64,000 bases of DNA from Octopus sinensis (GCF_006345805.1 NC_043014.1:37324001-37388000), one strand, 5' to 3'; positions 18,662 through 63,593 are shown, numbered from the stretch's first letter. Notes: generated by a model not told the origin, from the sequence alone. Translations and numbers: made by a program.

Positions 18662-18871
18662 CTCATCTAAAATTTCAAGATGTTTACTTTTAGAGTGAAA
18701 CATTTTCTCCCTCAATGCAATATGCAAGCAATTGTCACCATCTTTATTTATAGCGTCAAGATCTGCTCCTTTTAATACTAACATCTGCATGATCTCAAGG
18801 TTACCCTTAGAAACAGCCTGGAGGAATGGTGTCTGATCATGAGTGTTACGAATATCAAATTCCACTTCAGC
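18662..18871 (-). CDS. Ankyrin-repeat exon of the ankyrin-RING gene
   Basis: tttcatttccacaaag|GCT GAA..GAT GAG|gtaagt, 210 nt, phase 0 to 0. Encodes AEVEFDIRNTHDQTPFLQAVSKGNLEIMQMLVLKGADLDAINKDGDNCLHIALREKMFHSKSKHLEILDE. Confidence 0.92.
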
Positions 18872-19389
18872 CTTTGTGGAAATGAAAATAAAAAGTAAAA
18901 ATATCAATGTATCATGAGTGTTTTTACTGGATATTTGATCAGACTGTTACTGTGGATTTGATGTGGTCAATAAAACAAACCATTCATAGGTTGCACTGTA
19001 AGATGGTATGGATGTACATTAGAGACATGATAAATTTATGAAAATGACAAAAACAGGTTGTTTCAGGACAGTCTACTTTTATCCCTAGCTATATACCTAA
19101 CTCACAGTAAGTTATAGACTATTTGAGCTAGAAAGAACAATTAATTAGCAAATGAAATCCATTGAAGAAGAATCATTTGTCCAATGTATACTTTTGATGT
19201 TGCTATATCATTAAATGATCCATAAAATTGCTTTGTTGGTTAGAGTCAATGTTAAAATGATACCTACTTAGATGTTATATATTTGTGTGTTTCATACATT
19301 CAATATATAAATTTGTGTGTTTAATATACATTGAACTGCAAAAGATTTGCGAGACATGTGTAACTGTGAAATATGCTTGAATTTCATTA

Positions 19390-22603: not shown

Positions 22604-23262
22604 ACTTGCTGCTGCTGCTGCTGCTACTACTACTACTACAGAAAATCTGCTTGCCCTTCCCACCCAAAGGAAAGTTGAAGGCTAATCTTCAAAAACAACA
22701 ACAACAATGGCTTCCAATTTTGACACAAGGCCAGCAATTTTAGAGGGAAGGAGTTAGTTGATTACATCAATTCCAGTACTTGACTGGTACTTTATTTTAC
22801 TGACCTAGAAATAATGAAAGGCAAGTGACTTCAGTGAAACTTGAACTTTGAACAATAATAATCATAATTTCTAGCTTAGACACAAGAATAGGAAAAAAGT
22901 AGAGCACAGCTTTCTGAATTAACCCCTTAACTTTACTGGAATAAATTTCTATTGACCCCTTAAAATGACAATTCCTGGTAGGAATTTAACTTGAAACAAT
23001 GTGACAACAGTTAATACTCTTAAGTATATAATTCTGAAGGTGACTGTTCCAGGGATTGGTAATGGTGGTGACAATGATGATGATAAGGATGAAAGTGGTA
23101 GTGATGATGATGATGATGATGATTTCTTAATGAAGTAGATTTAAGAGTGAGGCCCCATAGTGGAATGATGGCATTAAGTGATTTGTTAAAAATTAAAATT
23201 TTGGCAAAACAGAAAAATAAAAGAGAACCAGATGCAAATATTCTGGATTATTCTTGACTTAC

Positions 23263-24095
23263 CGTAGAACTGCACACTGTAGGGATGTTTCATTATATTT
23301 ATCCTTTTTATTAATGTCAGCTCCAGACTGTATTAACAAGTCTACTATATCAGTAAATCCTTTATTGCAGGCAATGTGGAGTGCTGTATAACCACTGGCA
23401 CTGACCATATTAATGTCAGATTTGGACTGTATTAAAAAGTTTGCTATATCAGTACATTCTTTATCGCAGGCTATGTGAAGTGCCGTGTAACCATGGCTGT
23501 TGACAATATTGACATCAGCATCAAACTTTACTAACAACTTTACTACATCAACAAATTTTTTACTGCAAGCTATGTGAAGAGCTGTGTCACCACTGGTACT
23601 GATCATATTAATGTCAGATTTGGACTGTATTAAAAAGTTTGCTATATCAGTACATTCTTCATCGCAGGCTATGTGAAGTGCCGTGTGACCATGGCTGTTG
23701 ACAATATTGACATCAGCATCAAACTTTACTAACAACTTTACTACATCAACAAATTTTTTACTGCAAGCTATGTGAAGAGCTGTGTCACCAGTGGTACTGA
23801 CCATATTAATGTCAGATTTGAATCGTATTAACAAGTCTGCTATATCAGTAAATCCTTTATCGCAGGCTATGTGGAGTGCTGTGAAACCATTGTTCCTTAC
23901 AACATTGCTGTCTTGTTCAGACTGTAAAATCAACTTTACTGACTTAATGTGCCCAACACAACATGCCAGATGAAGAGCTGTGTCATAACCCATCTTTACC
24001 ACACAAAATTTCAGTAACAACTTAACCATGTCAACATTATTACTATCACAGGCGAGATCCAGAAGGTTTGTATTATTACCAACTTTTTTACGGGT
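23263..24095 (-). CDS. Large ankyrin-repeat exon (about 8 repeats) of a Mind bomb-like ankyrin-RING E3 ligase
   Basis: ctatctcttttcag|ACC CGT AAA..CTA CG|gtaagt, 833 nt, phase 0 to 2. Repeated G[DFHY]TALH[IL]AC..KLL..DIN motifs with 33-aa period. Confidence 0.95.
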
Positions 24096-30187: not shown

Positions 30188-31805
30188 CAGTGGCGGCCAA
30201 AATGTTCAGAACGGCATTGTTTTCGTCAGAAAAGTAGATATAATTTTTTATCAAAGTTGTTTTATATTCTATAATTTTCACAGACAATAAGTACGATATT
30301 GTGTTATTGCCTGAGATTTTGGTGTAATTTGAGAGGATAATACAAAAGTTATGGATGGTTTAGTGATTTACTGCAAAACCCATGGCAGCCAAAATGATCA
30401 GAACAGTTGCTTTTACTCCGTGGTTTAGTATATTTAACCGGCAAACTCTAATGTTTTGAATTTGTTTACGTGACGCTTCGTTTACTAAACATTAGTAAGA
30501 ATATTTGCAATGTACTTTGTTAATATAATGCCACTTACTCCGTTACCAATTCGTCAGCAGATTATTAAGCTTCGAAGGAAGGATAATTTAAGTATTGGAT
30601 CTATTGCAAACATTGTTAACAAGTCAAAAAGTGTTGTACACAGTATTCTTAAGGTCTACGATGATTCTGGTTCGTGTGAAGCAAGAAAGTTTACAGGTAG
30701 GCCAAGAAAAACGACCAAGAGAGAAGATCGTGCTATGGTAAAGTTGGTTAAAAAGGACAGATTTAAAACTACTGCTGCTGTTTCTCGGAAAATGAGCATT
30801 GTATTTAAGAAAACTTTATCTCGTAAAACTGTGTCTCGTCATTTAGTTGAACATGACCTACAAGCAAGAGCACCTGCAGTGAAGCCACTGATCAGCTCCA
30901 AGAATAAAAAGTGTCGTCTTACCTTTGCAACCGAACATGTCTTGTGATCTCAAGAAAAATGGCAAACGGTGCATTTCAGTGATGAATCTAAGTTTATGTT
31001 ATTTGGCTCAGATGGGAAAAGGTACGTTCGTCGAAAAGTAGGTAAAAAATTGTCGCCTAAATGCCTTAAGACTAGTGTTAAATTCGGTGGAGGAAGTGTC
31101 ATGGTTTGGGGGATGATATCTCGAGATGGTGTGGGCCCTTTTGTGTGATTACATGGAAATGTAAATGCAGGAGTTTATAAACAACTTGTAAAAGTGCCTG
31201 TGCTGAGAAATTCAACTAAGCGACCATCCATATTCATGCAGGACAATGCCCCATGTCACAAGGCTAAGGTGGTCATGAACTTCCTCAAGGCTGAAAAGGT
31301 TATTGTTATGGATTGGCCTGCTCAAAGCCCAGATCTCAATCCTATTGAAAATGTATGGAATATTCTAGGAGAACGTTCGAAAGCCAGAAATCCTAAAACA
31401 ACTGAGCAATTATGGAATGCCCTTCAGGAAGAATGGAATGAGATCACCCAGCAAGAAATTGAAAATTTAATTTCCTCATGCAGTCGAAGATATCAGAGTG
31501 TGATTGAAGCTAAAGGGCTTCACACTAAATATTAAATAATTCTAGTATTCTCTGTCATTTTTTATTATTTTGTTATTTTTTCAACCGTTCTGATCATTTT
31601 GGCCGCCATGGGTTTTGCAGTAAATCACTAAATCATCCATAACTTTTGTATTATCCTCTCAAATTACACCAAAATCTCAGACAATAACAATTAATATTGT
31701 ATTTATTGTCTATAAAAATTATAGAATATAAAACTACTTTGATAAAAACTTATACTTACTTTTCTGACGAAAACAATGCCGTTCTGAACATTTTGGCCGC
31801 AACAG
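30188..31805 (+). mobile_element. Tc1-like IR/DR transposon with disabled transposase (about 30528-31535)
   Basis: Long TIRs starting CAGTGGCGGCCAAAATGTTCAGAAC, inner direct repeats near 30381 and 31590, TA flanks. GRPRKTT, VHFSDESKF, FMQDNAPCHKA and WPAQSPDLNPIENVW motifs; premature stops. Confidence 0.95.
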
Positions 31806-32128
31806 TATATATAAATCTGTGGCTTAACTTCAGCTTTGATGAAAAGATAAAAGTTGTTATTTTGGATATTACAATTGAATTTGAGGATGTATACAATGAT
31901 AACCATATTCTAACTGTATGTTATATGTTTATATGCATGTATATTTGTATACATGTATATATGTATGAATATATATATATTTAGTCTTGTATCGTAATTT
32001 TCTGATATGTTAGAATCTATTATATGTATGGTCTAGTGAAGATTACTATAAATATAATTATATTGTTACATTTATATATTTGTTGTGCAAGATTTTTTAA
32101 GTGAAATCGTGTGATGAAACAGATATTG

Positions 32129-33599: not shown

Positions 33600-34185
33600 G
33601 TTTCCTTTTAATAGTTTCAGTATTAAAGTGAAAGTATCTGACATTACAATAAAGAGATGTTTTTCTTTCACTTTTGACACGTAATACTGAAATAGTGAAG
33701 ATATGATATTGCTGTGGGCTCGCCCTAGGAAAGAAGTTAAAATTTTTTTTATGCCCATGACACTACATGGACCCTAAGTAAGGCTTGTATAAAATTTGAA
33801 TGAAATTGGTTGTGTAGTTCTCAAGTTTTAGGGATTCACACAGACAGACAGACATTCATCATCATCATCATCATCATTTAGCGTCCGTTTTCCATGCTAG
33901 CATGGGTTGGACGGTTCAACTGGGGTCTGTGAAGCTGGAAGGCTTCATCAGGCCCAGTCAGATCTGGCAGTGTTTCTACGGCTGGATGCCCTTCCTAACG
34001 CCAACCACTCTGTGAGTGTAGTGGGTGCTTTTTATGTGCCACCCGCACAGGTGCCAGACAGAGCTGGCAAACAGCTACGAATGGATGGTTCTTTAATGTG
34101 TCACCGGCACGGGGGCCAGGCGAGGCTGGCAACGGACACGAACGGATGGTGCTTTTATCTCAGTTTTAAATATATAGATACATAA
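33600..34185 (-). mobile_element. Helitron 5' fragment interrupted by an RTE-tail element (33865-34150)
   Basis: Matches 11900-12179. CTCAGTTTTAAATATATAGAT resumes after the (CAT)n-tailed insert. Confidence 0.7.
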
Positions 34186-34251: not shown

Positions 34252-34570
34252 TGCATATCCATATATATAAATAAATATATACACATACATAGAAACTTGC
34301 ACACATGTATGTGTGGGTGAGCGTACATACGTATAGGCTACATGTATATCAGCCAGTATTCTTTCTCATTCTATAACGTTTTCACGATAAATATGCTGAT
34401 TAAAACATACTTGTGTATTAGTATGGCATATAAAATTGCAGACTTGTGTAATCATAGATATATATAAATAACCAAGTTTGTATGTGTGTGTGTAAATGTT
34501 TTAAATATTTTTTCTAAGTGAAAACAATGCAATTTATAAATATTGATAACACAGGTTGATGGTTACTTAT

Positions 34571-34597
34571 GGGTGATGGTGGTGGCATTCAACGTAC
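34571..34597 (-). pseudogene. Dead micro-exon A1
   Basis: Same flanks as the live cassettes, but acceptor AG>AT, donor GT>AT, and GTA CGT TGA stop in phase 0. Confidence 0.7.
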
Positions 34598-36120
34598 ATA
34601 TGGAGAAAAAGAGATGAGATACATGTGTATAGTGCATATACAGATAAATATATTCTCATACATAGAGACATGTGCACATATGAGTGTGTTTGTACATTCA
34701 TATGTATAGGCCACATGTATATCAGCCAGTATCTTATTTCATCAACAAAGATTAAAATATACGTGTTTATTAGTATCAGCCAGTATCTTTTCTCTTTGTA
34801 TAATGTTTAAAAAGAAATATGCTGATGAAAATATACGTGTGTATTAATATGGCATTAATAATTAATTAGAATAATAATTTCTACATTTATGAATTTGTGT
34901 TGCAAGATTCCTTGTGTGAAACTGTGTTGAAAGATATTGCTGCATATGGTGATGGTCATATTTTTTTGCTTTTTGCCAAATAGATATGTGCACTATATAT
35001 TCGTTCTTCCCCCATTTATTACTGTTCTTACTCTAACTCATGTCCATCATCCAGACACCTTTTGTCACACATCTGTGACCTCTTCAGTGACACTTTCCGT
35101 ATTCGTGTTTGCTCTTGCTCTGCTTATTCCATTCTATTCTTCTATGATGTGTCACATCATAAAAAAAAACAGAATGGAATGAGCAGAAGAAGAGCACACA
35201 CAAATGTAGAAAGTGTGGCTGAAGAGGTCAGAGATGTGTGACAAAAGGTATCCAGACAATGGACTTAAGTTAGAATAAGAAGAGTAATAAACAAGTGAAG
35301 ATCAGATATGTAGTGCATGTGTCTATTTGGCCAAAAAAGGAAAATAATGAACATCCCAAATGACAACAATATAATCATAATAATTAAACATTATGAATTC
35401 TTCTTGTAAGCTTGTTTCACTATGTGGCCTGCATACATTATCCATATCTTATTTATTATTGTACTTAAATTCATCATACTTTTATCTAAGAGTCTACCAC
35501 AAAAAGCAATGAATGAGAAGAAAAATCATATCTTTAGCAGCCATTTATGGAAAATCTGTCTGTGATAGGCGGAAACTAAAAATATATTTGAAATCAGCAT
35601 AAAAAATAGTTCTGAATCACTGAATAACCTATAAACAAACAATCAGCACTTATTTCATTTAAAAGTGCAGTTGTGTAATTATAGATATATAAAAATAATC
35701 ATGTGTGTGTATGTGTGTGCATGTGTGTGTGTAGATATATATATACATTTCTGTGTGTATGTGTTTGTGTATCTGTATGTGTGTGTGTGTTTGCATCTGT
35801 GTGTGTGTGTGAAAAAATCATCCAATGTTCTGTCATGAGGACCACAGACTTGAAGTGTTTCAAATTACAAGACACCATGTGAGAGAAAATCGCGATGTCA
35901 TTGGAGCATAATGTGTCCACATGGATGATGGCTCATTTGCAATCAATATTGCTGCAAAGAGAGAGAAAGTCAAACTGTTCAACCCATGACAGCAAGGAAT
36001 GTGGACATTAAACAACGACGATGCCGATGATGACTATGTTAATGTTTTAAATATGTTTTCTAAGCCAAAACAATGTAGTTATAAATATTAATAATATAGG
36101 TTGATGATTAGTTCCCTTAC

Positions 36121-36144
36121 CTGTCTTGCAGCAGTATGGCTCAT
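36121..36144 (-). CDS. Micro-exon B1 (24 nt, MSHTAARQ)
   Basis: ctcatctctttttctccatag|ATGAGCCATACTGCTGCAAGACAG|gtaagg. Open in phase 0; expression not shown. Confidence 0.7.
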
Positions 36145-38383
36145 CTATGGAGAAAAAGAGATGAGACATATATAGTATATATAGTGTATCATTCAACTAC
36201 AGCAGTAGCTGAATAATATTCTTAAGGACGCAATTTACACACACGCAGCACCTTTCAGAGCTTGTCACTAATTCAGTTCTTAACTAAATGGAAAACCAGT
36301 AGATGAAAATTGGTCCAGTAGAAAAATGTTTACAATAAAATTTGGACTGACATTATAGGAGACTAAATAACACCACCAGTCAAGTTTAGATCTAAATAAA
36401 GCAAAATATATTCATCTTAGCTTCAATGACAGAAGAAAGCATGAAGAATTTCATAGTTTTGTACCCATGCAACAAAAATTTGTATAAAAAAAGTTGGGAG
36501 GTAAAATATGAAAATTAATATAAGTAAGGCATAAAATTGAATTTAAGCATAAATAACTTTTTTGTTTTAAAAACAAGCTATATTTTAATCAACCAATAAT
36601 GCCAAAATTTTACTAGAGAATGAAATTGCCTGAAAATTCACAGATACTATTATTTTGACCTAAATAATAACTGAAAAAAAATTTCATTGAAATCTGTTTG
36701 ATACCGATTGCATACACATTAATAACACCTTCCATACTGTGATACTGATCATACAGAAATCACAATTTGTATCAAGTATTTGTTTCACACCCTTTAAATT
36801 AAGTGCCAGTTGAAATGGACAATCAGTATGAATGGGTAAAGCTGAATTCCTATTTTCAACTTCCTAATTATTAATAAATAATTAAAAAGATATTTTAATT
36901 CTTTACTTTTAAAAGAAGTAACAATTAATAACAAATAAATGTAATAAAGTGTAATAAAATTTTTAGTTTTAATAAATACTAATATTTTCTAAATCTAAAT
37001 ACTTCATTTGAACTTCTATCCTTAGCTGCAATATTTTAAGTAAAATCTTCTTGTTCTGTACTTTACCAGATGTAATAACTAGTCCTGAACTTTTCCAAGT
37101 GTAATAATAGGTCCTGTAATTTTCCAGGTTTATAAGCTTAAGAATATTATTTCTATTCCTCATATTTTTCCATGTAATATATATAGATAGTTAGGTTGAG
37201 ATATACATATATATACACACATGCATCCATACAAGCATGTAGATATACATATGTGTGTGTGTGTGTGTGTGTGTATGTATAGTCCACATGTGTACCAGCT
37301 CGTCAGTCAGTCTCACTGAACAGTGTTTATACAATAAACATGCTGAGTAAAATGTACATGTTAAGAATAATTATTGTAATAATAATAACTAGCAGATCCC
37401 TTAAACATTTGACAGAATCAACAGTCGATTTCATGGCTTATTTGTGAAAACTTTACCCTAAAACTCTAAAAGCGTAGCCTGGGTTGTGTTTGTATGAAAA
37501 GATGGTAAACATTCATTTTAGAAATATATTCTTTATTCTTATTATTTAAGCATTACTCCCTCATTTCCTTACTGACATGAAATTTCGTAACATTTTACTT
37601 CACGACTCTTTTTCTACTTATTTTTGGTCAATGCAACTAGCGATTCTTAATTCCTCGTGCATTTTTCTATCATTTAAGACTAAGAAAAGTATACTTTTAA
37701 TTTAAAATTTAAAAATTTATGTTAATTGAAGATGAATATCTGCCTACTGCTCATCACCCACCTTGAGGTCACATTATATTTTAATGTAACTTTTTTCTAC
37801 TGAACAAAGTCTCAAACTATTTATGCCAAACTATAGCTGAGGAGGTGACCTCTTTAAAACTATTAACAGTTTGCAATTTAGTTGAGAACTGAATTAGTAG
37901 TGAAGCTTGGAAGCTGCTGTGTTTGATGAAATGGTGGACTTGAGAATATATTCAGCCAGTACCGTGGTTGAATGATATTAGAACTTCTTAGAAGCTCAAT
38001 CAAATTGCTGGCCTACATACATTATTCACATCATTTCTTATTATTGATCTCGTCTTTTGTTCTTAATTTCATCATACTTTTACTTAGAAGTCTGCCACAA
38101 AGGCAACAAAATAACCTGTAAAATCATATCTTTATCAAACATATATGAAATATCTGTATGTAATAGGCAAATGTTAAAACCATTATTGAAATCAGTATGA
38201 AAAATAGTTCAGAATCACCTATAAGTAGACATTCATACTTTATTTCATTTAAAATTGCAAACTTGTGTAATCATAGATATTTATAAATAACTGTGTTTGT
38301 GTGTGTAAATGTTTTAAATATTTTTTCTAAGTGAAAACAATGCAATTTATGAATATTAATAACACAGGTTGATGGTTACTTAT

Positions 38384-38410
38384 GGGTGATGGTGGTGGCA
38401 TTCAACATAC
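38384..38410 (-). pseudogene. Dead micro-exon A2
   Basis: Duplicate of A1: AG>AT, GT>AT, GTA TGT TGA stop. Confidence 0.7.
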
Positions 38411-39816
38411 ATATGGAGAAAAAGAGATGAGATACATGTATATAGTGCATATATAGATAAATATATTCTCATACATAGAGACATGTGCACATATGTGTTT
38501 GTACATCCATATGTATAGGCCACATGTATATCAGCCAGTATTTCATCAACAAAGATTTAAATATATGTGTGTATTAATATGGCATCAATAATTAATTAGA
38601 ATAATAATTCTATATTTATAAATTTGTGTTGCAAGATTCCCCATGTTATACTATTATTTGAAACATATTGCTGCATATGGTGATGGTCATATTTTTTTGT
38701 TTGCCAAATAGATACGTGCACTATATATTCGTTCTTCCCCCATTTATTACTGTTCTTACTCTAACTCATGTCCATCATCCAGATACCTTTTGTCAAACAT
38801 CTGTGACCTCTTCAGTGACACTTTCCGTATTCGTGTTTGCTCTTGCTCTGCTTATTCCATTCTGTTCTTCTATGATGTGTCACATCATAAAAAAAAACAA
38901 TGGAATGAGCAGAAGAAGAGCACACACGAATGCAGAAAGTGTTGCTGAAGAGGTCAGAGATGTGTGACAAAAGGTATCCAGACAATGGGCTTAAGTTAGA
39001 ATAAGAAGAGTAATAAACAAGTGAAGATCAGATATGTAGTGCATGTGTCTATTTGGCCAAAAAAGGAAAATAATGAACATCCCAAATGACAACAATATAA
39101 TCATAATAATTAAACATTATGAATTCTTCTTGTAAGCTTGTTTCACTATGTGGCCTGCATACATTATCCATATCTTATTTATTATTGTACTTAAATTCAT
39201 CATACTTTTATCTAAGAGTCTACCACAAAAAGCAAAGAATGAGAAGAAAAATCATATCTTTAGCAGCCATTTATGGAAAATCTGTCTGTGACAGGCGGAA
39301 ACTAAAAATACATTTGAAATCAGCATAAAAAATAGTTCTGAATCACTGAATAACCTATAAACAAACAATCAGCACTTATTTCATCTAAAAGTGCAGTTGT
39401 GTAATTATAGATATATAAAATTAATCATGTGTGTGAGTATGTGTGTGCATGTGTGTGTGTGTAGATATATATATACATTTGTGTGTGTATGTGTTTGTGT
39501 ATCTGTATGTGTGTGTGTGTGAAAAAATCATCCAATGTTCTGTCATGAGGACCACAGACATGAAGTGTTTCAAATTACAAGACACCATGTGAGAGAAAAT
39601 CGCAATGTCATTGGAGCATAATGTGTCCACATGGATGATGGCTCACTTGCATTCAATATTGCTGCAAAGAGAGAGAAAGTCAAACTGTTCAACCCATGAC
39701 AGCAAGGAATGTGGACGTTAAACAACGACGATGCCGATGATGATTATGTTAATGTTTTAAATATGTTTTCTAAGCCAAAACAATTAACAATATAGGTTGA
39801 TGATTAGTTCCCTTAC

Positions 39817-39840
39817 CTGTATTGGACTGCTTTCAAAGAA
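39817..39840 (-). CDS. Micro-exon B2 (24 nt, FFESSPIQ)
   Basis: ctcatctctttttctccatag|TTCTTTGAAAGCAGTCCAATACAG|gtaagg. Open in phase 0, stop in phase 1. Confidence 0.7.
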
Positions 39841-40929
39841 CTATGGAGAAAAAGAGATGAGACATATATAGTATATATAGTGTATCATTCAACTACAGCA
39901 TTAGTTGAATAATATTCTTAAGGACGCAATTTACACACATGCAGCACCTTTCAGAGCTTGTCACTAATTCAGTTCTTAACTAAATGGAAAACCAGTAGAT
40001 GAAAGTTGGTCCCGTAGAAAAATGTTTACAATAAGATTTGTTGTGACATTATAGGAGAGTATGTAACACCACCAGTCAAGTTTAGATCTAAATAAAGCAA
40101 AATATATTCATCTTAGCTTCAATGACAGAAGAAAGCCTGAAGAATTTCATAGTTTTGTGCCCATGCAACAAAAATTTGTATAAAAAAAGTTGGGAGGTAA
40201 AATATGAAAATTAATATAAGTAAGGCATAAAATTGGATTTAAGTATAAATAACTTTTTTGTTTTAAAAACAAGCTATATTTTAATCAACCCAAAAATGTC
40301 AAAATTTTTCTAGAGAATGAAATTGCCTGAAAATTCACAGATACTATTATTTTGACCTAAATATCAACTGAAAGAAATTTCATTGAAATCTGTTTAATAC
40401 CGATTGCATACACATTAATAACATCTTCCATACTGTGATACAGATCATACAGAAATCACAATTTGTATCAAGTATTTGCTTCACACCCTTTAAATTAAGT
40501 GTCAGTTGAAATGATTTTTTATAACCTATTTTCAACTTTCTAATTATTAATTAATAATTAAAAAAATATTTTAATTGAATTATTCTTTATTTTTAAAAGA
40601 AGTAACAAGCAATAACAAATAAATGTAATAACGTGTAATAAAATTTTTAGTTTTAATAAATGCTAATATTTTCTAAATCTAAATATTTCATTTGAACTTC
40701 TATCCTTAGCTGCAATATTTTAAGTAAAATCTTCTTGTTCTGCACTTTACCAGGTGTAATAACTAGTCCTGAACATGTCCAAGTGTGATAATAGGTCCTC
40801 TAATTTTCCAGGTTTATAAGCTTAAGAATATTATTTCTATTCCTCATATTTTTCCATGTAATATATATAGATAGTTAGGTTGAGATATACATATATATAC
40901 ACACATGCATCCATACAAGCATGTAGATA

Positions 40930-40982
<53 letters not shown>

Positions 40983-42101
40983 TGTATGTATAGGCCACAT
41001 GCTTACCAACTGGTCAGTCAGTCTCACTACACAGTGTTTATACAATAAACATGCTGAGTAAAATGTACATGTTAAGAATAATTATTGTAATAATAATAAC
41101 TAGCAGATCCCTTAAACGTTTGAAAGAATCAAAAGTCGACTTCATGGCTTATTTCTGAAAACTTTACCCTAAAACTCTAAAAGCGTAGCCTGGGTTGTGT
41201 TTGTGTGAAAAGATGGTAAACATTCATTTTAGAAATATATTCTTTATTCTCATTCTTGGAGCATTACTCCCTCATTTCCTTACTGACATGAAATTTCGTA
41301 ACATTTTACTTCACGACTCTTTTTCTACTTATTTTTGTTCAATGCAACTAGCGATTCTTAATTCCTCGTGCATTTTTCTATCATTTAAGACTAAGAAAAG
41401 TATACTTTTAATTTAAAATTTTAAAATTTATGTTAATTGAAGATGAATATCTGCCTACTGCTCATCACCCACCTTGAGGTCACATTATATTTTAATGTAA
41501 CTTTTTTCTACTGAACAAAGTCTCAAACTATTTATGCCAAACTATAGCTGAGGAGGTGTCCTCTTTAAAACTATTAACAGTTTGCAATTTAGTTGAGAAC
41601 TGAATTAGTAGTGAAGCTTGGAAGCTGCTGTGTTTGATGAAATGGTGGACTTGAGAATATATTCAGCCAGTACTGTGGTTGAATGATATTAGAACTTCTT
41701 GGAAGCTCACTAAAATTGCTGGCCTACATACATTATTCACATCATTTCTTATTATTGATCTCATCTTTTGTTCTTAATTTCATCATACTTTTACCTGGAA
41801 GTCTGCCACAAAAGGCAACAAAATAACCAGTAAAATCATATCTTTACCAAACATTTATGAAAAATCTGTATGTGATAGGCAAAGATTAAAACCATTATTG
41901 AAATCAGTATGATAAATGGTTCAGAATCACCTATAAGTAGACAATCATAATTTATTTCATTTAAAATTGCAGACTTGTGTAATAACAGATATTTATAAAT
42001 AATTGTGTTTGTATGTGTGTCTGTAAATGTTTTAAATATTTTTTCTTAGTGAAAACAATGCAATTTATAAATTTCAATAACACAGGTTGATGGTTACTTA
42101 C

Positions 42102-42143
42102 GTAAGGCATTGACTCCCTGCATCGAGTCTTTCTCATGCATAC
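42102..42143 (-). CDS. Micro-exon C1 (42 nt, VCMRKTRCRESMPY)
   Basis: cacttctttttctccatag|GTATGCATGAGAAAGACTCGATGCAGGGAGTCAATGCCTTAC|gtaagt. Confidence 0.7.
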
Positions 42144-42896
42144 CTATGGAGAAAAAGAAGTGATATATACATATATATATAGTGTATATATAGATAAATA
42201 TATACTCATACATAGAGACATGCACACACATGTGTGTGTTTGTGCATTCATACGTATAGGCTACATGTATATCAGCCAGTATCTTTTCTCTTTGTATAAT
42301 GTTTAAAAAGAAATATGTTGATGAAAATATACGTGTGTATTAATATGGCATTAATAATTAATTAGAATACTAATGTCTACATTTATGAATTTGTGTTGCA
42401 AGATTCCTTGTGTGAAACCGTGTGTTGAAAGATATTGCTGTACAAAAAGATATTGCTGTACTTTTTTCGTTTTTTGCCAAATAGATACGTGCACTATATA
42501 TTCGTTCTTCACACATTTATTACTGTTCTTACTCTAACTCATGTCCATCATCCGGAAACCTTTTGTCACACATCTGTGACCTCTTCAGCAACACTTACTG
42601 TATTTGTGTGTGCTCTGCTTATTCCATTCTAAGACCTCTTCAGTGACACTTTCCGTATTCGTGTGTGCTCTCGCTCTGCTTATTCCATTTTGTTCTTCTA
42701 TCGTGGGTCACATATAATGGGTCACATCATAGAAGAACAGAATGGAAGAAGAAGAACAAGAGCACACACAAATAAGGAAAGTGTTGCTGAAGAGGTTAGT
42801 TACAGATGTATGACGAAAGGTTTCTGGACGTTGGATGTTGGTTAAAATAGCAAGAGTAATAAACAAGTGAAGAGCAAATATATAGTGCACGTGTCT

Positions 42897-43070
42897 ATCA
42901 TCATCATCATCGTCGTTTAACGTCCGTTCTCCATGCTAGCATGGGTTGGACGGTTCGACCGGGGTTCTGGGAAGCCAGAAGGCTGCACCAGGCTCCAGTC
43001 TAATTTGGCAATGTTTCTACAGCTGGATGCCCTTCCTGACGCCAACCACTCCGTGAGTGTAGTGGGTGCT
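42897..43070 (-). mobile_element. RTE-tail fragment inserted into a module
   Basis: (CAT)n-CGTTTAACGTCCG..CCATGCTAGCATGGG; the module sequence resumes at ATTTGGCATGAAAATG. Confidence 0.8.
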
Positions 43071-43475: not shown

Positions 43476-43523
43476 TATATAACAAAGTTGAGTTGTGGGG
43501 TACCGCACGAGTGGAATTATATA

Positions 43524-45176
43524 CGAAAGAAGGTTTGAAAATGCAATTTAAAAGATGTTTATTCACTTTACCGGTTTCACTCTTTGGAAAAAGATTGTCA
43601 AAAGTAACATGTGGAAGTTTGGTTGCGTTAATTATTGGTTGTTGCAAATTGCTACATTACATATATATATACAGACTTTGGTAACAGGGACATGTTAAGG
43701 ACATAAAAAAGTTCAACAAGTTCCTTAAAATATTGGGCAAAAAAGATTATATAAATAATCGTTCTCAAGGACATACTTAAGATAGTTTCCAGAAGGAATT
43801 GATATTGGTACTGTATCTGTATATTTAAACATGCACAGAATATTGGTTGACACAATATAAATATACAGTCTTTGGTGACAATAGTATGTTGAGAATATAA
43901 AAAAGTTTAACAAGCTCATTGAAAAAATGGGCAGAAAAGATTAAAACAAATATATTATACATCTGAGGGTAATTTCCAGGAGGAATTATTAAAAAAAAGT
44001 TCAGTATACACATACAGAATATTATGAGTTCAAAAAGATTTACATTAATGTAGTGGTGAGGTTGTTACTAACCTGTCCGTTTTAGCAGAAATGTGGAATA
44101 AGACGCGCACGCACACGCGCGCACACGGGCAGGCACGCATATACACACACCATCCTACCCCCAAAAATTCTTTAAACAACACACATCTATTTACACCACC
44201 CTGGAACAAATCAAAAACAGCCCCCACGCACACACAGACACATGTATACGTGTATGTGCACGCACACAGGGACACACACACTCACACCAATCTCACCTCC
44301 ATACAGGCACATATATACACACGCAGCACCATGTCAAATGCCATCCACACACATACATGCGTACACACGCACACACACACACAACACCATGACAACCACA
44401 CACGCGGTTGACAAACAGACACCATCTGACCAAATACTACAGACACACAGACACATCTATTCACACCACATGTATATGTATGCACACACACATACACGCA
44501 GAGACTCACATATTCACCTCATCCTAACCCCAAAATCATTGATGCTTGAAGGAGAGCCAAAAAGAGAAAAAAATGGGTACATTCTATTCAATTCCACATT
44601 TCTGCTAAAACGTACAGGTTAGTAACAACCTCACCACTACATTAATGTAAATCTTTTTGAACTCATAATAGTCTGTGTGTATACTGAACTTTTTTTAATA
44701 ATTCCTCCTGGAAATTACCCTGAGATGTATAATATATTTGTTTTAATCTTTTCTGCCCATTTTTTTCAATGAGCTTGTTAAACTTTTTTATATTCTCAAC
44801 ATACTGTTGTCACCAAAGACTGTATATTTATATGGATTATAGTACTCTGTGTCAACCAATATTCTGTGCATGTTTGAATATACAGATACAGTACCAATAT
44901 CAATTCCTTCTGGAAACTATCTTAAGTATGTCCTTGAGAACGATTATTTATGTAATCTTTTTTGCCCAATATTTTAAGGAACTTGTTGAACTTTTTTATG
45001 TCCTTAACATGTCCCTGTTACCAAAGACTGTATATATATATGTAATGTAGCAATTTGCAACAACCAATAATTAACGCAACCAAACTTCCACATGTTACTT
45101 TTGATAATCTTTTTCCAAAGAGTGAAACCGGTAAAGTGAATAAACATCTTTTAAATCGCATTTTCAAACCTTCTTT

Positions 45177-45178
<2 letters not shown>
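43524..45178. mobile_element. Foldback-like element: about 590-bp inverted arms around a 480-bp CA-rich spacer
   Basis: TA|CGAAAGAAGGTTTGAAAATGC ... CGCATTTTCAAACCTTCTTTTG|TA. Arms 43524-44102 and about 44585-45178 are reverse complements with internal sub-repeats. A related terminus lies at about 28470-28578. Confidence 0.85.
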
Positions 45179-45215
<37 letters not shown>

Positions 45216-45542
45216 ATAATTGTGTGTGTGTGTGTGCAAGTGTTTGTATGTATATATGTGTGTGTGTGTGTATATTTAAGTGTGCATGTGTATGTGTGTA
45301 TGTATATATATATATAGATAGATAGATATAGATATATATGAAAAACTTTTCCAATCTTCTTTGTGCTGAGGACAAGAAGCTTGTGCTTCAAATTGTAAGA
45401 CAGTGTCTGAGAGAAAATTGTGATGTCATTGGAGAGAAATGTGTCCACATGGACGATGTCTCACTTGCATTCAATGATGCTGCAAAAGAGAGACTGGGAG
45501 ATGCCACTATGTAAGGTTGATTTAGAAGTACAGACTTGTGTA

Positions 45543-45544: not shown

Positions 45545-45579
<35 letters not shown>

Positions 45580-45596
45580 TCATCATCATATATATG

Positions 45597-45627
<31 letters not shown>

Positions 45628-45694
45628 GTATGTATATATATATATATGTATATATATGTATGTATGTATATATATATATGTATATATATGTATG

Positions 45695-45725
<31 letters not shown>

Positions 45726-45845
45726 GTATATATATATATGTATATATATATATATTATATATATATATATATATGTATATATATGTATGTATATATATAT
45801 ATGTATATATATGTATGTATATATATATATGTATATATATGTATG

Positions 45846-45933
<88 letters not shown>

Positions 45934-46085
45934 TAAATGTATATATATATAGATATATGTATATATATATATATAAATGTATATATATATAGATATATGT
46001 ATATATATATAGATATATGTATATATTATATATATATAAATAATTATGTGTTTGTGTGTGTATATGTATATATATATAGATATAT
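45545..46085. repeat. Long (TA)n/(TATG)n microsatellite array
   Basis: Direct inspection. Similar arrays at 28580-28760, 33300-33490 and 34200-34250. Confidence 0.95.
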
Positions 46086-46410
46086 ATGAAAAAATATGCA
46101 GCATATTAATAGGTCAGAGTACTTGATTCCATGAAAAAATTTAATTTTTTTGTTTTTTCTTAGTGAAAATCATGTGGGTGTTAATATAGAAATTGACTAT
46201 AATATTGTTGTTTTTAGCCTCAAATAAGCCCTGATACTGCAAACGTATCATCAAAGACATTCCACCCTTCAGCAAACCATCTTTTTAGGCATAATCTAAG
46301 ACATTACATACATGTGATACTTTGGCTGTATTTTTCAGCATGTCGAGCGACTAGGTAGAGGCCTTTTCATTCGTTCGATTGTGTGCTGAGATTTTTTTAC
46401 ACATATATGT

Positions 46411-49400
46411 CATCATCATCATTTAGTGTCCGTTTTCCATGCTAACATGGGTTGGACGGTTCAACTGGGGTCTGTGAAGCCAGAAGGCTGCATCAGGCCC
46501 AGTCTGATCTGGCAGTGTTTCTACGGCTGGATGCCCTTCCTAACGCCAACCACTCCGCGAGTGTAGTGGGTGCTTTTTACGTGCCACCCGCACAGGAGCC
46601 AAACGGAGCTGGCAAACGGCCATGAACGGATTGTGCATTTACGTGCCACCGGCACTGGGGCCGGACGAGGCTGGCAACGGACACAAACGGATGGTGCTTT
46701 AACGTGCCACCGGCACGGAGGCCAGTCGTGGCGGCACTGTCAACAACCACGAAAGGATGGTGCTTTTTACTTGCCACCGGCACGGGGGCAGGGCGACACT
46801 GGCAACGGCCACGAACAGATAGTGCTTTTTACGTGCCACCGGCACGGGGGCCAGACGAGGCTGGCAACGGCCACGAACGGATGGTGCTTTTTACGTGTCA
46901 CCAGCATGGAGGCCAGTCGGGGCGGCGCTGGCAACGGCCACGATCGGATGGTTCGCTTACTTGTCACCGGCACTGGTATCACAGCCGCAGTTTCCATTGA
47001 TGTTGATCGACTTCGATTTTGGTTCTGCTTTCTGATATCTTCACAAGTGGAGTTTTGTGTCCCAAGAAGGAAAGGTATGTATAAGTCGACTGGCTACATA
47101 CCAGGTAGAAGCCACAGGTTATGTCTCACTAGTCTTGCCGGGTCTTCTCACGCACAGCATATTTCCATAGGTCTCGGTCTCTAGTAATTTCCTTGGTGAG
47201 ACCTAAAGTGTGAAGGTCGTGCTTCACCACCTCGTCCCAGGTTTTCCTGGGTCTACCTCTTCCACAGGTTCCCTCAACTGCTAGGGTGTGGCACTTTTGC
47301 ACACAACTATCTTCAGCCATTCTCATCACGTGACCATACCAGCGCAAACTTCTCTCTTGCACACCACAACTGATGCTTCTTAGGTCCAACTTTTCTCTCA
47401 AGGTACTTACACTCTGTCGATTATGAACACTGACATTACACATCCATCGGAGCATACTGGCTTCATTTCTTGCGAGCTTACGCATATATATCCTCAGCAG
47501 TCACGGCCCATGTTTCACTCCCATGTAGCATGGCTGTACGTACACATGCATCATACAGTCTGCCTTTTACTCTGAGTGAGAGGCCTTTTGTCACCAGCAG
47601 GGGTAAGAGCTCTCTAAACTTTGCCCAGGCTATTCTTACTCTAGCAGTTACACTTTCAGCACACCCACCCCCGCTACTGACTTGGTCACCTAGGTAGCAG
47701 AAGCTATCAACTACTTCTAGTTTGTCTCCCTGGAACGTGGTAGAAGTTGGTCTCTGCACATTTCCAGTGTTTATTGCTCCTGAGCATCTACCACAGACAA
47801 AAACTATTTTCCTAGTTAGCCTTCCTTTGACATTGCTGCACCTCTTATGTGTCCATAGCTTACACTTGGTGCATCTTATAGAGTTTCTACTTACACCTTT
47901 TTTACAGATCGACCAGGGCCATCTACCTGAAGTCATTTGTGATTGGTCTACCTTCCTACTTATTAGGACTTTGGTTTTGGCTAGGTTGATTCTAAGGCCC
48001 TTCGATTCTAATCCTTGTTTCCACACCTGAAACTTCTCCTTCAGTTCTGATAGTGACTCAGCAATTAGAGCAAGGTAATCAGCATAGAGGAGCTCCCAGG
48101 GGCATCCTGTCTTGAATTCCTCCATTATTGCCTGGAGGACTATGATAAATAGGAGGGGACTGAGGACTGAACCTTGGTGGACCCCAACCTCTACCCGGAA
48201 TTCTTCACTGTACTCGTTGCCAACCCTCACCTTACTAGCAGCGTCTCTGTACATGGCTCGCACAACTCTCACTAACCATTCATCTATCCCCAGTTTCCTT
48301 ATTGACCACCAGATAAGGGATCGGGGGACCCCGTCGAAGGCTTTCTGCATGTCAACAAAAACCAGGTACAGGGGCTTATCTTTGGCTAGGTATTTCTCCT
48401 GCAGCTGTCTTACCAGGAATATAGCATCAGTAGTACTTTTCCCTGGCACGAACCCAAACTGCATCTGATCTAAGCTAACTCTCTCTCTAATTAGGTGGGC
48501 TATGACCCTCTCCGTAACCTTCATTACCTGATCCAGCAGCTTGATACCCCTGTGGTTATTTGTATCTAGGGCGTCACCTTTACCTTTGTAGCAGTTGACT
48601 ATTATGCTGCTACACCAGTCATTGGGTATGACTCCTTCGTGTATCACCTGGTTAACTATACGGGTAACTAGGCTATAGCCGACACTACCAGATATTTTGA
48701 GCATCTCTGCAGTAATTCCTGATGGGCCTGGGGCTTTCCCTGTTTTCATGCTTGTAATTGCCTTAACTACTAAGGAACAGTCAACTCGGATTGCTGGTCC
48801 CTCTGTTGGGTCGACATTAGGCCGACTCTCTTTATCCCATTCATTTTCCTCATTCAGCAACCTTTCATAGTGGCGTCTCCAAACCTCTCTCTTTGTATCC
48901 TCATTTAGCGCAAGTGAACCGTCATCCTTGCGAACACATTTCTCTACTACCATGTCACGATTCTCCCTCACACACTGTCTTGCAACACGAAATACCTCAA
49001 GTCTTTCATCCTCACGGCGCAGCACCTTGGCAAATTTTTTCTTATCTGCTTCCCCTCTGGCTAAATACACCTGCCTCCTAGCTTCCCTTCTGGCAGTCTG
49101 ATACACTTCCCTGCTACCACCATTCTTCCAGTCCTTCCAAGCCTGTTTCTTTTGTCTAATAGCCCTGTCAACAATATTGTTCCACCACCACGTTATTTTG
49201 GGTCTTGAGGGGACTTTGCACCAGCCACAGATCTGGTCAGTAGCTTTCAGCAGGTTGTCCCTCAGAAGCGTCCAGTTGTATTCTACCCCATGTGTAGCTA
49301 TACCTCCCTCTATTTCGTCAAAGGCTTCAAGTAACATGTCTCTAAATCTCTGTCCATTCGCAGGGTCTTTAAGCTTCCAGACCCTTCTTCTCCATGTTGG

Positions 49401-51103: not shown

Positions 51104-51135
51104 GGGTATGCTTTATGATAGTTTCTCGGGTATAC
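51104..51135 (-). CDS. Micro-exon C2 (32 nt as assembled, VYPRNYHKAY+CC)
   Basis: cacttctttttctccatag|GTATACCCGAGAAACTATCATAAAGCATACCC|gtaagt. Splice sites intact, but one base short of 33. Confidence 0.45.
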
Positions 51136-53466: not shown

Positions 53467-53502
53467 ATCGTACATTACTTGTCCATCATATCCTCGGAAT
53501 TC
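53467..53502 (-). CDS. Micro-exon C3 (36 nt, EFRGYDGQVMYD)
   Basis: cacttccttttctccatag|GAATTCCGAGGATATGATGGACAAGTAATGTACGAT|gtaagt. Only phase 0 is open. Confidence 0.75.
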
Positions 53503-53542
53503 CTATGGAGAAAAGGAAGTGAGATATATATATATAGATATA

Positions 53543-57794: not shown

Positions 57795-57830
57795 ATGGTG
57801 TATTACTTGTTCATCATATCCTCGGAATTC
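57795..57830 (-). CDS. Micro-exon C4 (36 nt, EFRGYDEQVIHH)
   Basis: cacttccttttctccatag|GAATTCCGAGGATATGATGAACAAGTAATACACCAT|gtaagt. Confidence 0.75.
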
Positions 57831-57872
57831 CTATGGAGAAAAGGAAGTGAGATATATATATATATAGATATA

Positions 57873-63526: not shown

Positions 63527-63571
63527 CTGGAATATTCTTGCCTGAGTGTCATCAGTGTTTCTTATGCATAC
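63527..63571 (-). CDS. Micro-exon C5 (45 nt, VCIRNTDDTQARIFQ)
   Basis: cacttccttttctccatag|GTATGCATAAGAAACACTGATGACACTCAGGCAAGAATATTCCAG|gtaagt. Only phase 0 is open. Confidence 0.75.
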
Positions 63572-63593
63572 CTATGGAGAAAAGGAAGTGAGA

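What the first reader, a model, noticed from the sequence alone, without database searches (positions are those of the whole stretch)
36095..39870. Micro-exons B1 and B2 differ at 13 of 24 nt although the surrounding 3.7-kb tandem units are near-identical
Seen: ATGAGCCATACTGCTGCAAGACAG versus TTCTTTGAAAGCAGTCCAATACAG, with 11 of 24 positions matching. The 26-nt and 28-nt immediate flanks are identical, length is kept at 24 nt, and neither has a phase-0 stop. C2 versus C5 and A2 versus C1, which sit at equivalent module positions, show the same pattern plus length change. Inference: ordinary point mutation since such a recent duplication is unlikely to explain this. Options are gene conversion that homogenises introns while exons escape under selection, or templated replacement of the exon from donors elsewhere.
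Basis: partly seen in the sequence, partly recalled or inferred. Interest (0 to 1): 0.8.

Follow-up and report, generated by a model that had tools for sequence, protein, structure and literature searches.

The report
Octopus ankyrin gene micro-exon array
The two 24-base segments are real alternative micro-exons in a tandemly duplicated array inside an octopus ankyrin-repeat gene; one copy kept the ancestral sequence and the other was rewritten over its first 19 bases, a striking but not unprecedented case of exon birth, remodelling and death.

Summary
B1 (36121-36144) and B2 (39817-39840), both on the minus strand, differ at 13 of 24 nt. Their ~3.7-kb tandem units differ at only 3.9% of aligned sites (P~8e-13). 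The nearest flank mismatches lie 60 nt upstream and 28 nt downstream.

The window holds nine such modules, each with a branch point, polypyrimidine tract, AG, a 24-45 nt exon and GTAAGT. They sit in the last intron of an octopus ankyrin-repeat gene. The Octopus vulgaris orthologue (CAI9737748.1) includes exon C5's counterpart (VCIRNTDDTQAGIFQ) in its annotated protein, in a low-confidence linker between ankyrin repeats 3 and 4.

O. vulgaris has only four modules. Its M3 equals B2 (23/24) and its M2 equals C5 (44/45). B1, C2, C3, C4 and A have no counterpart there. With O. vulgaris as outgroup, 12-13 changes fall on B1 inside exon nt 1-20, against 8 in ~680 nt of flank.

So B2 is ancestral and B1 was rewritten, most likely as a segmental replacement in a redundant, weakly constrained linker exon. 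A local intronic template is suggestive only. The introns are mosaic, consistent with gene conversion. However, the razor-sharp divergence peak and the outgroup argue against "old exons, homogenised introns". A donor elsewhere in the genome could not be searched for.

The parts
36121..36144 (-). Micro-exon B1 (24 nt, ATGAGCCATACTGCTGCAAGACAG = MSHTAARQ in phase 0). This is the derived copy.
   Evidence: Searches show AG acceptor and GTAAGG donor intact. Searches place 12-13 lineage-specific changes within nt 1-20. Searches find no counterpart in the O. vulgaris locus.
39817..39840 (-). Micro-exon B2 (24 nt, TTCTTTGAAAGCAGTCCAATACAG = FFESSPIQ). This copy keeps the ancestral sequence.
   Evidence: It is 23/24 identical to O. 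vulgaris M3 (L001 34575-34598).
34571..34597 (-). Pseudo-exon A1 (27 nt). The acceptor AG is mutated to AT, the first GT of the donor is mutated to AT, and there is a phase-0 stop.
   Evidence: It differs from A2 at 1 of 27 nt.
38384..38410 (-). Pseudo-exon A2, the tandem-duplication partner of C1. It carries the same splice-site lesions as A1.
42102..42143 (-). Micro-exon C1 (42 nt, VCMRKTRCRESMPY). It occupies the same position as O. vulgaris M2 but shares only its first 23 nt (20/23).
51104..51135 (-). Micro-exon C2 (32 nt, not a multiple of 3). Probably a decaying or 'poison' exon.
   Evidence: It also has an excess of private changes in the first 100 nt of its downstream intron.
53467..53502 (-). 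Micro-exon C3 (36 nt, EFRGYDGQVMYD).
   Evidence: It differs from C4 by 4 substitutions; by my reading of the codons all four are nonsynonymous.
57795..57830 (-). Micro-exon C4 (36 nt, EFRGYDEQVIHH).
63527..63571 (-). Micro-exon C5 (45 nt, VCIRNTDDTQARIFQ). Its orthologue is an annotated coding exon in O. vulgaris.
   Evidence: It is 44/45 identical to L001 31831-31875, which encodes residues 146-160 of P0124.
34427..38245 (-). Tandem unit copy I (contains A1 and B1).
38246..41957 (-). Tandem unit copy II (contains A2 and B2).
41958..42898 (-). Partial third copy (contains C1 and its upstream intron).
23259..24095 (-). Terminal coding exon of the same gene (ankyrin repeats). It has a phase-0 acceptor (...tctcttttcag|ACC) and ends in a stop codon.
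   Evidence: It is orthologous to L001 60321-60659.
35928..35957 (.). Candidate local template for B1 nt 1-19, inside an old TE fragment of the downstream intron. It contains ATGAGCCAT in direct orientation and ATATTGCTGCAA in inverted orientation.
   Evidence: Suggestive only: P=0.005 against shuffles, but 13% of real 24-mers reach the same score.
45347..45514 (-). Remnant of a further B-type module. The exon position is now occupied by an (AT)n tract at 45546-46087.

Best explanation
SHOWN. The segments are cassette micro-exons (phase 0-0) in a tandem array of at least nine exon-intron modules. The array lies on the minus strand, in the long last intron of an octopus ankyrin-repeat gene. The exons encode versions of, or additions to, a flexible linker between ankyrin repeats 3 and 4.

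INFERRED. The array grew by unequal crossing-over between modules. The 3.7-kb [A+B] unit duplicated at about the time this species split from O. vulgaris.

SHOWN, with one outgroup. B2 kept the ancestral exon, while all the change lies on B1 and is confined to exon nt 1-19/20.

INFERRED. B1 was rewritten by a segmental replacement: a delins or template-switch-like complex mutation, in one or a few events. The replacement kept the length, the frame and both splice sites. It persisted because the exon is a redundant copy of a weakly constrained linker, whether tolerated or favoured.

The same process runs across the array. Alignable exon parts diverge at roughly intron rates. Other parts are replaced or gain and lose bases in frame, and some copies die (A1/A2, C2, O. 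vulgaris M1). The introns stay similar because the duplications are young and because modules still exchange sequence by gene conversion.
For: Real exons:
- Nine modules share a CTCAY branch site, a polypyrimidine tract, AG, and a GTAAGT/GTAAGG donor.
- Six of seven independent exon lengths are multiples of 3 (P=0.007), and phase 0 is open in all intact exons (P=0.047).
- C5's orthologue is a coding exon of O. vulgaris P0124/CAI9737748.1, flanked by phase-0 junctions.

Linker: the AlphaFold model of P0124 has mean pLDDT 87.8. Block means over residues 141-170 are 66, 46 and 56, with pLDDT below 50 at residues 155-164. This stretch covers the micro-exon and the start of the last exon.

Polarity:
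- O. vulgaris M3 matches B2 at 23/24 and M2 matches C5 at 44/45. B1 is absent from that locus.
- 12-13 B1-derived changes fall in the exon, against 8 in ~680 nt of flank.

Timing: flank distances are B1-M3 3.4%, B1-B2 3.8-5% and B2-M3 4.9-6%. Upstream introns are star-like at 4.5-6.1%.

Segmental mode:
- B1 and B2 are no more alike than shuffles.
- C1 and C5 match at 20/23 in the 5' part and are then unalignable.
- A1 and A2 (dead copies) differ at 1/27.
- The intron itself carries delins-type clusters.

Intron exchange: mosaic polymorphism blocks and Sawyer-type run tests.
Against: - Only one outgroup species and one locus were available. Loss of a B1-type module in O. vulgaris cannot be excluded.
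- Neutral complex mutations should strike a 24-nt exon only about 2-4% of the time at the density seen in the introns (my estimate). Yet most duplicated exons here carry such changes. Some exon-specific force (selection, or a donor-templated process) is therefore still needed and has not been identified.
- No RNA evidence shows that B1, B2, C1, C3 or C4 are spliced in.
- B2's upstream flank carries more derived changes than B1's (18-26 against 8), which a simple duplication model does not predict.
Confidence: 0.55

Rival explanations
1. Old exon repertoire with homogenised introns. B1- and B2-type exons (and the C variants) are ancient and kept distinct by selection. Gene conversion and unequal crossing-over keep erasing divergence in the surrounding introns, so the units only look young.
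For: The module introns are mosaic, with significant runs of shared polymorphism (C2-C5 P<0.0005; A2-C1 0.0025). A2 and C1 diverge by 6.6% in the first 410 nt but 0.9% from 410 to 850 nt. The window's downstream introns are closer to each other (2.3-7%) than to O. vulgaris M2's (8.6-11%). Exon relationships do not track intron distances. The model itself is established; red/green opsin exon 5 is the example in PMC3924837.
Against: B1, C2, C3/C4 and A types are absent from the O. vulgaris locus. All B-exon change is on the B1 branch, and B2 has hardly moved. There are no mismatches within 60 nt upstream or 28 nt downstream of the exon, so there is no sheltered shoulder. Conversion tracts of tens to hundreds of nt would be expected to leave one (my reading). 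B1's flanks are as close to O. vulgaris M3 as to B2. Upstream introns show no excess similarity among paralogues.
Confidence: 0.15
2. Germline templated replacement from a donor outside the window. A short gene-conversion patch from a diverged B-type module elsewhere in the genome (a paralogous gene, or array units beyond base 64000) overwrote the first ~19 nt of B1. The flanks are identical, so the true extent of the tract is invisible.
For: B1 nt 1-19 are unrelated to the ancestral sequence while nt 20-24 and both flanks are retained. The array continues past the window edge, since C5 lies only about 430 nt from base 64000. B-type modules with other exon bodies do exist (O. vulgaris M1). Conversion among modules is evident in the introns.
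Against: No sequence within 3 mismatches of B1 occurs in the window or in the 70-kb O. vulgaris locus. No 12-mer-level donor was found for any exon beyond its known paralogues. The rest of the genome could not be searched.
Confidence: 0.17
3. Stepwise positive selection. Many single-base substitutions in B1 were each driven to fixation by diversifying selection on the encoded loop.
For: Seven of eight codons differ and all the differences change the amino acid (my reading of the codons). C3 and C4 differ by 4 substitutions, all nonsynonymous on the same reading, at 11% divergence against 2.4-4.6% in their introns. Splice sites and reading frame are preserved.
Against: Five adjacent codons differ at 2-3 positions each, and the similarity is at random level. 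This looks like replacement rather than accumulated single hits. The C3/C4 excess is not significant (about P=0.09 by my binomial estimate). The encoded segment is a low-confidence linker. Orthologous exons are conserved between species (1/24 and 1/45).
Confidence: 0.08
4. Not functional at all. Most duplicated segments are unused pseudo-exons, and the apparent exon-specific change is a local mutational hotspot between the flanking (TA)n and (CA)n microsatellites.
For: Every cassette is bracketed by a (TA)n tract about 25-60 nt upstream and a (CA)n tract about 95 nt downstream. TEs have repeatedly inserted into the (TA)n tract. Several copies are clearly dead: A1, A2, C2 and M1. Only one micro-exon is in the annotated O. 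vulgaris mRNA.
Against: The 22 nt upstream and about 90 nt downstream of the exon lie inside the same microsatellite-bounded cassette but are not hypervariable. The dead pair A1/A2 evolve at background rate, 1/27. Exon lengths stay multiples of 3 and frames stay open.
Confidence: 0.1

Closest known systems
Tandem exon duplication producing arrays of alternative or cassette exons (general class; Dscam-type clusters are the extreme case; from my own knowledge)
   Same: Repeated exon-intron modules lie in one orientation inside one gene. Each has its own splice sites, all share one phase, and copies are born and die.
   Different: The exons here are 24-45 nt and vary in length. They encode a disordered linker rather than a folded domain segment. 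The introns, not the exons, are the conserved part. No docking or selector RNA structure was found. Mutually exclusive use was not tested.
Schistosome micro-exon genes (MEGs) (PMC5825161, PMC10526429)
   Same: Both have short symmetric exons (multiples of 3) separated by long introns. Both show rapid sequence turnover, internal duplication and possible shuffling of micro-exons, with variation expected through exon skipping.
   Different: In MEGs most of the coding sequence is micro-exons, and the products are secreted parasite proteins. Here the micro-exons form only one linker in an otherwise ordinary ankyrin-repeat gene of a mollusc.
Divergence peaks in paralogues under gene conversion, e.g. 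red/green opsin exon 5 (Teshima and Innan model, reviewed in PMC3924837)
   Same: Divergence is high in an exon and low in the flanking introns of tandem duplicates. There is evidence of sequence exchange between the copies.
   Different: The peak here is 19-45 nt wide with no shoulder. The change sits on one branch only, and the divergent exon type is missing from the outgroup.
Short template-switch or complex mutation clusters (Loytynoja and Goldman 2017, PMC5453318)
   Same: A dense cluster of differences sits on one lineage within about 20 nt. Part of it matches nearby sequence in inverted orientation (12 nt with 1 mismatch, 165 nt away).
   Different: The match needs two pieces, one direct and one inverted. 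Its significance is marginal. Such events are not expected to favour exons.

Membership tests
Tandemly duplicated cassette-exon array | Several homologous exon-intron modules in tandem, in the same orientation, within one gene | tested here: met
   Nine modules lie on the minus strand between 34.5 and 63.6 kb. They sit upstream of the terminal ankyrin exon of the same gene, as in the O. vulgaris orthologue.
Tandemly duplicated cassette-exon array | Each copy is flanked by functional-looking splice signals, and the copies share phase and frame | tested here: met
   All seven intact copies have branch site, polypyrimidine tract, AG and GTAAGT. Six of seven independent lengths are multiples of 3, and phase 0 is open. 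A1 and A2 fail and are pseudo-exons.
Tandemly duplicated cassette-exon array | Copies are included in mature mRNA | tested here: inconclusive
   Only the C5 orthologue is in an annotated O. vulgaris CDS. Seven guessed alternative isoforms are not in the protein collection. No transcript data are available for this species.
Tandemly duplicated cassette-exon array | Mutually exclusive choice guided by competing RNA pairings | tested here: not met
   The consensus fold of the nine cassettes gives -2.3 kcal/mol with no covariation. Only the cassettes themselves were tested, not distant docking sites.
Schistosome-type micro-exon gene (MEG) | Most of the coding sequence is built from symmetric micro-exons | tested here: not met
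   In P0124 one 45-nt micro-exon lies among exons of 111-339 nt.
Schistosome-type micro-exon gene (MEG) | Secreted product with a signal peptide | not tested
   No signal-peptide predictor was run. The product is an all-ankyrin repeat protein.
Selected divergence island under concerted evolution (opsin exon 5 type) | [quoted passage not shown] | tested here: inconclusive
   True for downstream introns (2.3-7% against 8.6-11%). Not true for upstream introns or for the B flanks (B1-M3 3.4% against B1-B2 3.8-5%).
Selected divergence island under concerted evolution (opsin exon 5 type) | Both exon types predate the species split | tested here: not met
   B1 has no counterpart in the 70-kb O. vulgaris locus. 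This rests on a single outgroup.
Selected divergence island under concerted evolution (opsin exon 5 type) | The divergence peak extends into linked neutral sites (a shoulder) | tested here: not met
   No mismatch occurs within 60 nt upstream or 28 nt downstream of B1/B2. A shoulder does exist for A2/C1: 6.6% over 0-410 nt against 0.9% beyond.
Donor-templated cassette replacement (programmed or conversion-based) | A donor copy of the new exon sequence exists | tested here: not met
   None was found in the window or in L001. The rest of the genome cannot be searched with these tools.
Donor-templated cassette replacement (programmed or conversion-based) | Somatic and germline DNA, or haplotypes, differ at the exon | not testable with these tools
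   Only one assembly sequence is available.
Local template-switch mutation cluster | The clustered change is confined to one lineage | tested here: met
   12-13 B1-derived changes lie in exon nt 1-20, against 0-1 in B2.
Local template-switch mutation cluster | The derived sequence copies nearby sequence, often inverted | tested here: inconclusive
   B1 nt 1-9 match intron positions +184..+193 in direct orientation (9/9). B1 nt 8-19 match +163..+175 in inverted orientation (11/12). The shuffle test gives P=0.005, but 13% of real 24-mers score as high, and the test was designed after seeing the match.

The most novel reading that the evidence does not exclude
The array may be a germline 'exon nursery'. 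On this reading, the bodies of duplicated micro-exons, and little else, are rewritten by short templated patches copied from intronic TE fragments or from other exons. That would yield a lineage-specific repertoire of alternative inter-repeat loops for an ankyrin scaffold, a recognition-diversity system built from micro-exons.
Probability: 0.07. Interest if true: 0.8.

Novelty: new member of a known kind. Interest (0 to 1): 0.42.

Why it matters
This is a clean natural example of how alternative micro-exons are born, remodelled and lost. A related species serves as outgroup, and the intron sequence provides an internal neutral yardstick.

Exon bodies here change mainly by in-frame segment replacement, not by point substitution, while splice signals are kept. 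If transcript data confirm that several of these exons are used, the locus would show how a flexible loop in a repeat-protein scaffold can diversify quickly in one cephalopod lineage.

It would also provide a test case for whether complex (template-switch type) mutations feed exon innovation. The locus is also a caution for annotators: eight of the nine modules would be missed by homology-based annotation.

Tried and rejected
- Rfam scan of the whole window: no hits.
- Consensus RNA fold of the nine cassettes: no structure and no covariation. On the plus strand I also checked by eye for snoRNA or spacer-repeat features and found no C/D boxes. The minus-strand splice signals fit far better.
- Protein search with the concatenated micro-exon peptides found nothing, although P0124 contains one of them.
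- Exact look-ups of the window's RT and ankyrin ORFs were not on record.
- A search with the LINE reverse transcriptase gave hits of 59% identity or less and no organism.
- Two metagenome scans for module flanks returned zero hits.
- Donor search for every exon in the window with 12-mers allowing 1 mismatch found only known paralogues. The same search in the O. vulgaris locus found only B2, C5 and the 5' part of C1. One fuzzy-regex run timed out.
- Local single-piece templating within 600 nt was not significant for any exon. Two-piece templating was significant only for B1, and only against shuffles.
- In-place inversion of the ancestral B exon gives 11/24 matches with one run of 6 (by eye), which is not convincing.
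- Exon similarity to other coding exons of the gene was not significant. This includes B1 GCTGCAAGA against the end of exon 4, C5 AAGAAACACTGATGA against the end of exon 4, and B2 against the start of exon 3 (P=0.1-0.16). The C-type match is in frame and may reflect the origin of the micro-exon from the 3' end of exon 4.
- Seven guessed O. vulgaris isoforms with other micro-exon combinations are not in the protein collection.
- Literature searches for an existing description of this locus found none.

Full report
**1. Checking the observation**

Both 24-mers occur once, on the minus strand, at 36121-36144 (B1) and 39817-39840 (B2). Read on that strand, each is preceded by CTCATCTCTTTTTCTCCATAG and followed by GTAAGGGAAC.

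The surrounding tandem duplication spans 34427-39052 and 38246-42898. It aligns at 93.9% identity over ungapped columns. In the well-aligned core the substitution divergence is 3.9% (131/3371), and the alignment as a whole has 27 gap runs. BLAST identity including gaps is 89-91%, so 'near-identical' is a little generous.

The exons differ at 13 of 24 positions. With the core background, P is about 8e-13. In that core, the only two places where 24-nt windows reach 13 or more mismatches are the two exon positions, B1/B2 and A2/C1. The nearest flank mismatches are 60 nt upstream and 28 nt downstream. After gapped alignment, B1 and B2 are no more similar than shuffled sequences (0.50 against 0.48, P=0.42).

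**2. What the modules are**

The acceptor motif occurs nine times, always on the minus strand, between 34.5 and 63.6 kb. A multiple alignment shows the same anatomy each time:
- a (TA)n tract;
- a 22-nt block holding a CTCAY branch-site match, a polypyrimidine tract and AG;
- a variable segment;
- GTAAGT (C and A types) or GTAAGG (B type);
- about 90 nt of conserved intron, a (CA)n tract, and then up to 900 nt more of homologous intron.

The variable segments are 24, 24, 42, 32, 36, 36 and 45 nt in the intact copies, and 27 nt in A1/A2. Six of seven independent lengths are multiples of 3 (P=0.007). Phase 0 is the only frame open in all intact copies (P=0.047 for five independent exons). A1 and A2 have AG mutated to AT, the first donor GT mutated to AT, and an in-frame stop. 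They are pseudo-exons, and they differ from each other at only 1 of 27 nt.

No Rfam family matches and no conserved RNA structure is present.

**3. The gene**

A 256-aa ankyrin ORF lies on the same strand at 23259-24029. It extends upstream to a phase-0 acceptor, so the exon begins at 24095.

Searching with this ORF returned 'ankyrin repeat RF_0381 isoform X1' of Octopus vulgaris (P0124, CAI9737748.1). Its sequence reads ...LLEAARNSVE-VCIRNTDDTQAGIFQ-PPLKDGYDTNLLDLACDSNN.... The middle 15 residues are micro-exon C5 with one substitution.

The O. vulgaris locus was fetched as L001 (70.7 kb, OX597833.1). There the protein maps to exons at 15537-15647, 17207-17365 and 25952-26107, the 45-nt micro-exon at 31831-31875, and a terminal exon at 60321-60659. 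All relevant junctions are in phase 0.

The window is therefore from an Octopus species a few per cent diverged from O. vulgaris. Single-copy stretches match at 91-93% including gaps. The array sits in the gene's last intron, and the exon preceding the array lies beyond base 64000.

An AlphaFold model of P0124 is confident overall (mean pLDDT 87.8, pTM 0.81). Block means over residues 141-170 are 66, 46 and 56, with pLDDT below 50 at residues 155-164. This stretch covers the micro-exon and the first residues of the last exon.

By inspection, the first residues of C-type exons continue the loop motif that ends ankyrin repeat 3: VCIRN in C5, VCMRK in C1, VYPRN in C2 and AYSRN in M4. That fits the better conservation of their 5' halves. 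The rest, and all of the 8-residue B-type exons, is linker.

**4. Comparison with O. vulgaris**

L001 holds only four modules:
- M1, B-type and dead (acceptor GG, donor GA);
- M2, which matches C5 at 44/45;
- M3, which matches B2 at 23/24;
- M4, a 48-nt open exon with a GTAACC donor.

B1, C2, C3, C4 and A have no counterpart. M2 occupies C1's position, with the same TE-fragment remnant and upstream intron before it and the B2-like module after it. However, C1 shares only its first 23 nt with M2 (20/23).

A three-way alignment of B1, B2 and M3 places 12-13 changes on the B1 branch, inside exon nt 1-20. Only 8 B1-derived changes fall in about 680 nt of alignable flank. The B2 exon has 0-1 changes.

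Flank distances are B1-M3 3.4%, B1-B2 3.8-5% and B2-M3 4.9-6%. The unit duplication is therefore about as old as the species split. The upstream introns of C1, C2, C3 and M2 form a star at 4.5-6.1%. The downstream introns of the window's modules are 2.3-7% apart but 8.6-11% from M2's.

**5. Intron exchange**

The polymorphic-site matrix of six downstream introns is visibly mosaic. Run tests are significant for several pairs: C2-C5 P<0.0005, A2-C1 0.0025 and A2-C4 0.003. A2 and C1 differ by 6.6% in the first 410 nt and 0.9% from 410 to 850 nt.

Similarity of the A modules to C-type modules drops from about 90% to about 76% within roughly 50 nt upstream of the A exon, at the (TA)n tract. This fits a recombination junction.

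Weaker matches of 71-77% show that each ~2.3-kb super-unit contains an older pair of sub-units. The B position is one of these. It survives as a live exon in the two [A+B] units and as a remnant at 45.3-45.5 kb.

**6. How exon bodies change**

Where exon parts can be aligned, they diverge at about intron rates:
- C1/C5 5' part: 3 differences in 23 columns, against about 6% in their downstream introns;
- A1/A2: 1 difference in 27;
- C3/C4: 4 differences in 36, against 2.4-4.6%.

The excess is in segmental replacements and indels. These include B1 nt 1-19, the 3' half of C1, a deletion plus an insertion in A, and several events in C2 and in the C3/C4 ancestor. Delins-type clusters also occur in the introns, about three in 3.4 kb. 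At that density a given micro-exon should be hit only a few per cent of the time (my estimate). The enrichment at exons is therefore real, and it is not explained by neutral mutation alone.

**7. Where did B1's new sequence come from?**

No donor exists in the window or in L001. Within its own downstream intron, B1 nt 1-9 (ATGAGCCAT) match +184..+193 exactly in direct orientation. B1 nt 8-19 match +163..+175 in inverted orientation at 11/12. Both sources lie in one old TE fragment.

Together these pieces cover exactly the part of the exon that differs from the ancestor. Only 12 of 2500 shuffles score as high (P=0.005). However, 13% of real 24-mers from this repeat-rich window do so against their own flanks, and the statistic was designed after the match was seen. 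I treat this as a lead for a template-switch or patch-repair origin (PMC5453318), not as a result. No other exon shows such a signal.

**8. Weighing the explanations**

Three findings count against it for B1/B2: the outgroup, the one-sided change, and the lack of any shoulder.

The second option (a donor elsewhere) fits the anatomy but has no donor so far.

My best reading is lineage-specific module duplication followed by segmental rewriting of the redundant copy of a weakly constrained linker exon. Selection or an unidentified templating process would account for the enrichment at exons. I put this at 0.55, the donor-conversion rival at 0.17 and the old-exon rival at 0.15.

**9. Novelty**

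I found no description of this array. It belongs to known kinds: tandem exon duplication with birth and death of copies. It resembles schistosome micro-exon genes in exon size, symmetry and turnover (PMC5825161) but fails their defining features. It is a good specimen rather than a new category.

Noticed in passing
window 23309-23890 (minus strand): The terminal ankyrin exon carries an internal tandem amplification (period 99/198 nt, about 2.8 copies at 90%). The exon therefore encodes about 279 aa here against 113 aa in O. vulgaris. The ankyrin repeats themselves have been duplicated in this lineage.
   Followed up: partly
window 38665-39098, 34934-35372, 51514-52023, 56123-56616, 42464-42898: Each upstream intron segment contains a ~430-nt inverted repeat (long hairpin, arms about 80% complementary). 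It is probably a MITE that was in the module before the array expanded.
   Followed up: no
window 43518-45184: A foldback-type element with ~590-nt terminal inverted repeats at 95% identity is inserted between the B-type remnant and C1's upstream intron. It is absent at the matching place in O. vulgaris.
   Followed up: no
window 46693-49337 and 9230-10507; L001 28783-30633: An RTE-like LINE (RT plus PHD finger) has a 619-aa open ORF. The copy at the corresponding place in O. vulgaris is only 76% identical and in the opposite orientation relative to the gene, so the insertions were independent.
   Followed up: partly
window 63593-63996, 42898-43058, 33858-34157, 46410-46700, 61367-61661, 10836-11132, 12852-13124: A SINE-like element with a (GAT)n tail is associated with 62-66-nt tandem repeats. 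One copy sits exactly 22 nt upstream of exon C5, directly against the branch-site block.
   Followed up: no
window 53530-55075 and 57860-59950: A TE with gag-like ORFs (CCHC zinc knuckle; 344 and 450 aa) lies immediately upstream of the acceptors of C3 and C4. Its first ~550 nt are part of the C3/C4 duplication, while the two ORF regions differ.
   Followed up: no
window 45546-46087: An (AT)n tract of about 540 nt occupies the place where a B-type exon and its proximal intron would be expected. This suggests an exon was lost to microsatellite expansion.
   Followed up: partly
window 18599-18907 (minus strand): A second ankyrin-repeat ORF lies downstream of the terminal exon's stop codon. It may be part of a neighbouring paralogous gene.
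   Followed up: no
window 39775-39790 compared with 36074-36087: B2's proximal downstream intron lacks 14 nt that are present in B1 and in O. vulgaris M3. B2's upstream 220 nt also carries 10 derived changes against 2 in B1, even though B2 kept the ancestral exon.
   Followed up: partly
window 30510-31535 (plus strand): A mariner/Tc1-like transposase is split into two ORFs (a decayed copy) in the intron between the array and the terminal exon.
   Followed up: no
L001 26050-26107 compared with window 63549-63563: The 3' end of O. vulgaris exon 4 (AAGAAACAGTGTTGA, R-N-S-V-E) matches the 5' part of the C-type micro-exon (AAGAAACACTGATGA, R-N-T-D-D) in frame at 13/15. The micro-exon family may have begun as a duplication of the end of exon 4. 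The match is not significant on its own (P=0.12).
   Followed up: partly
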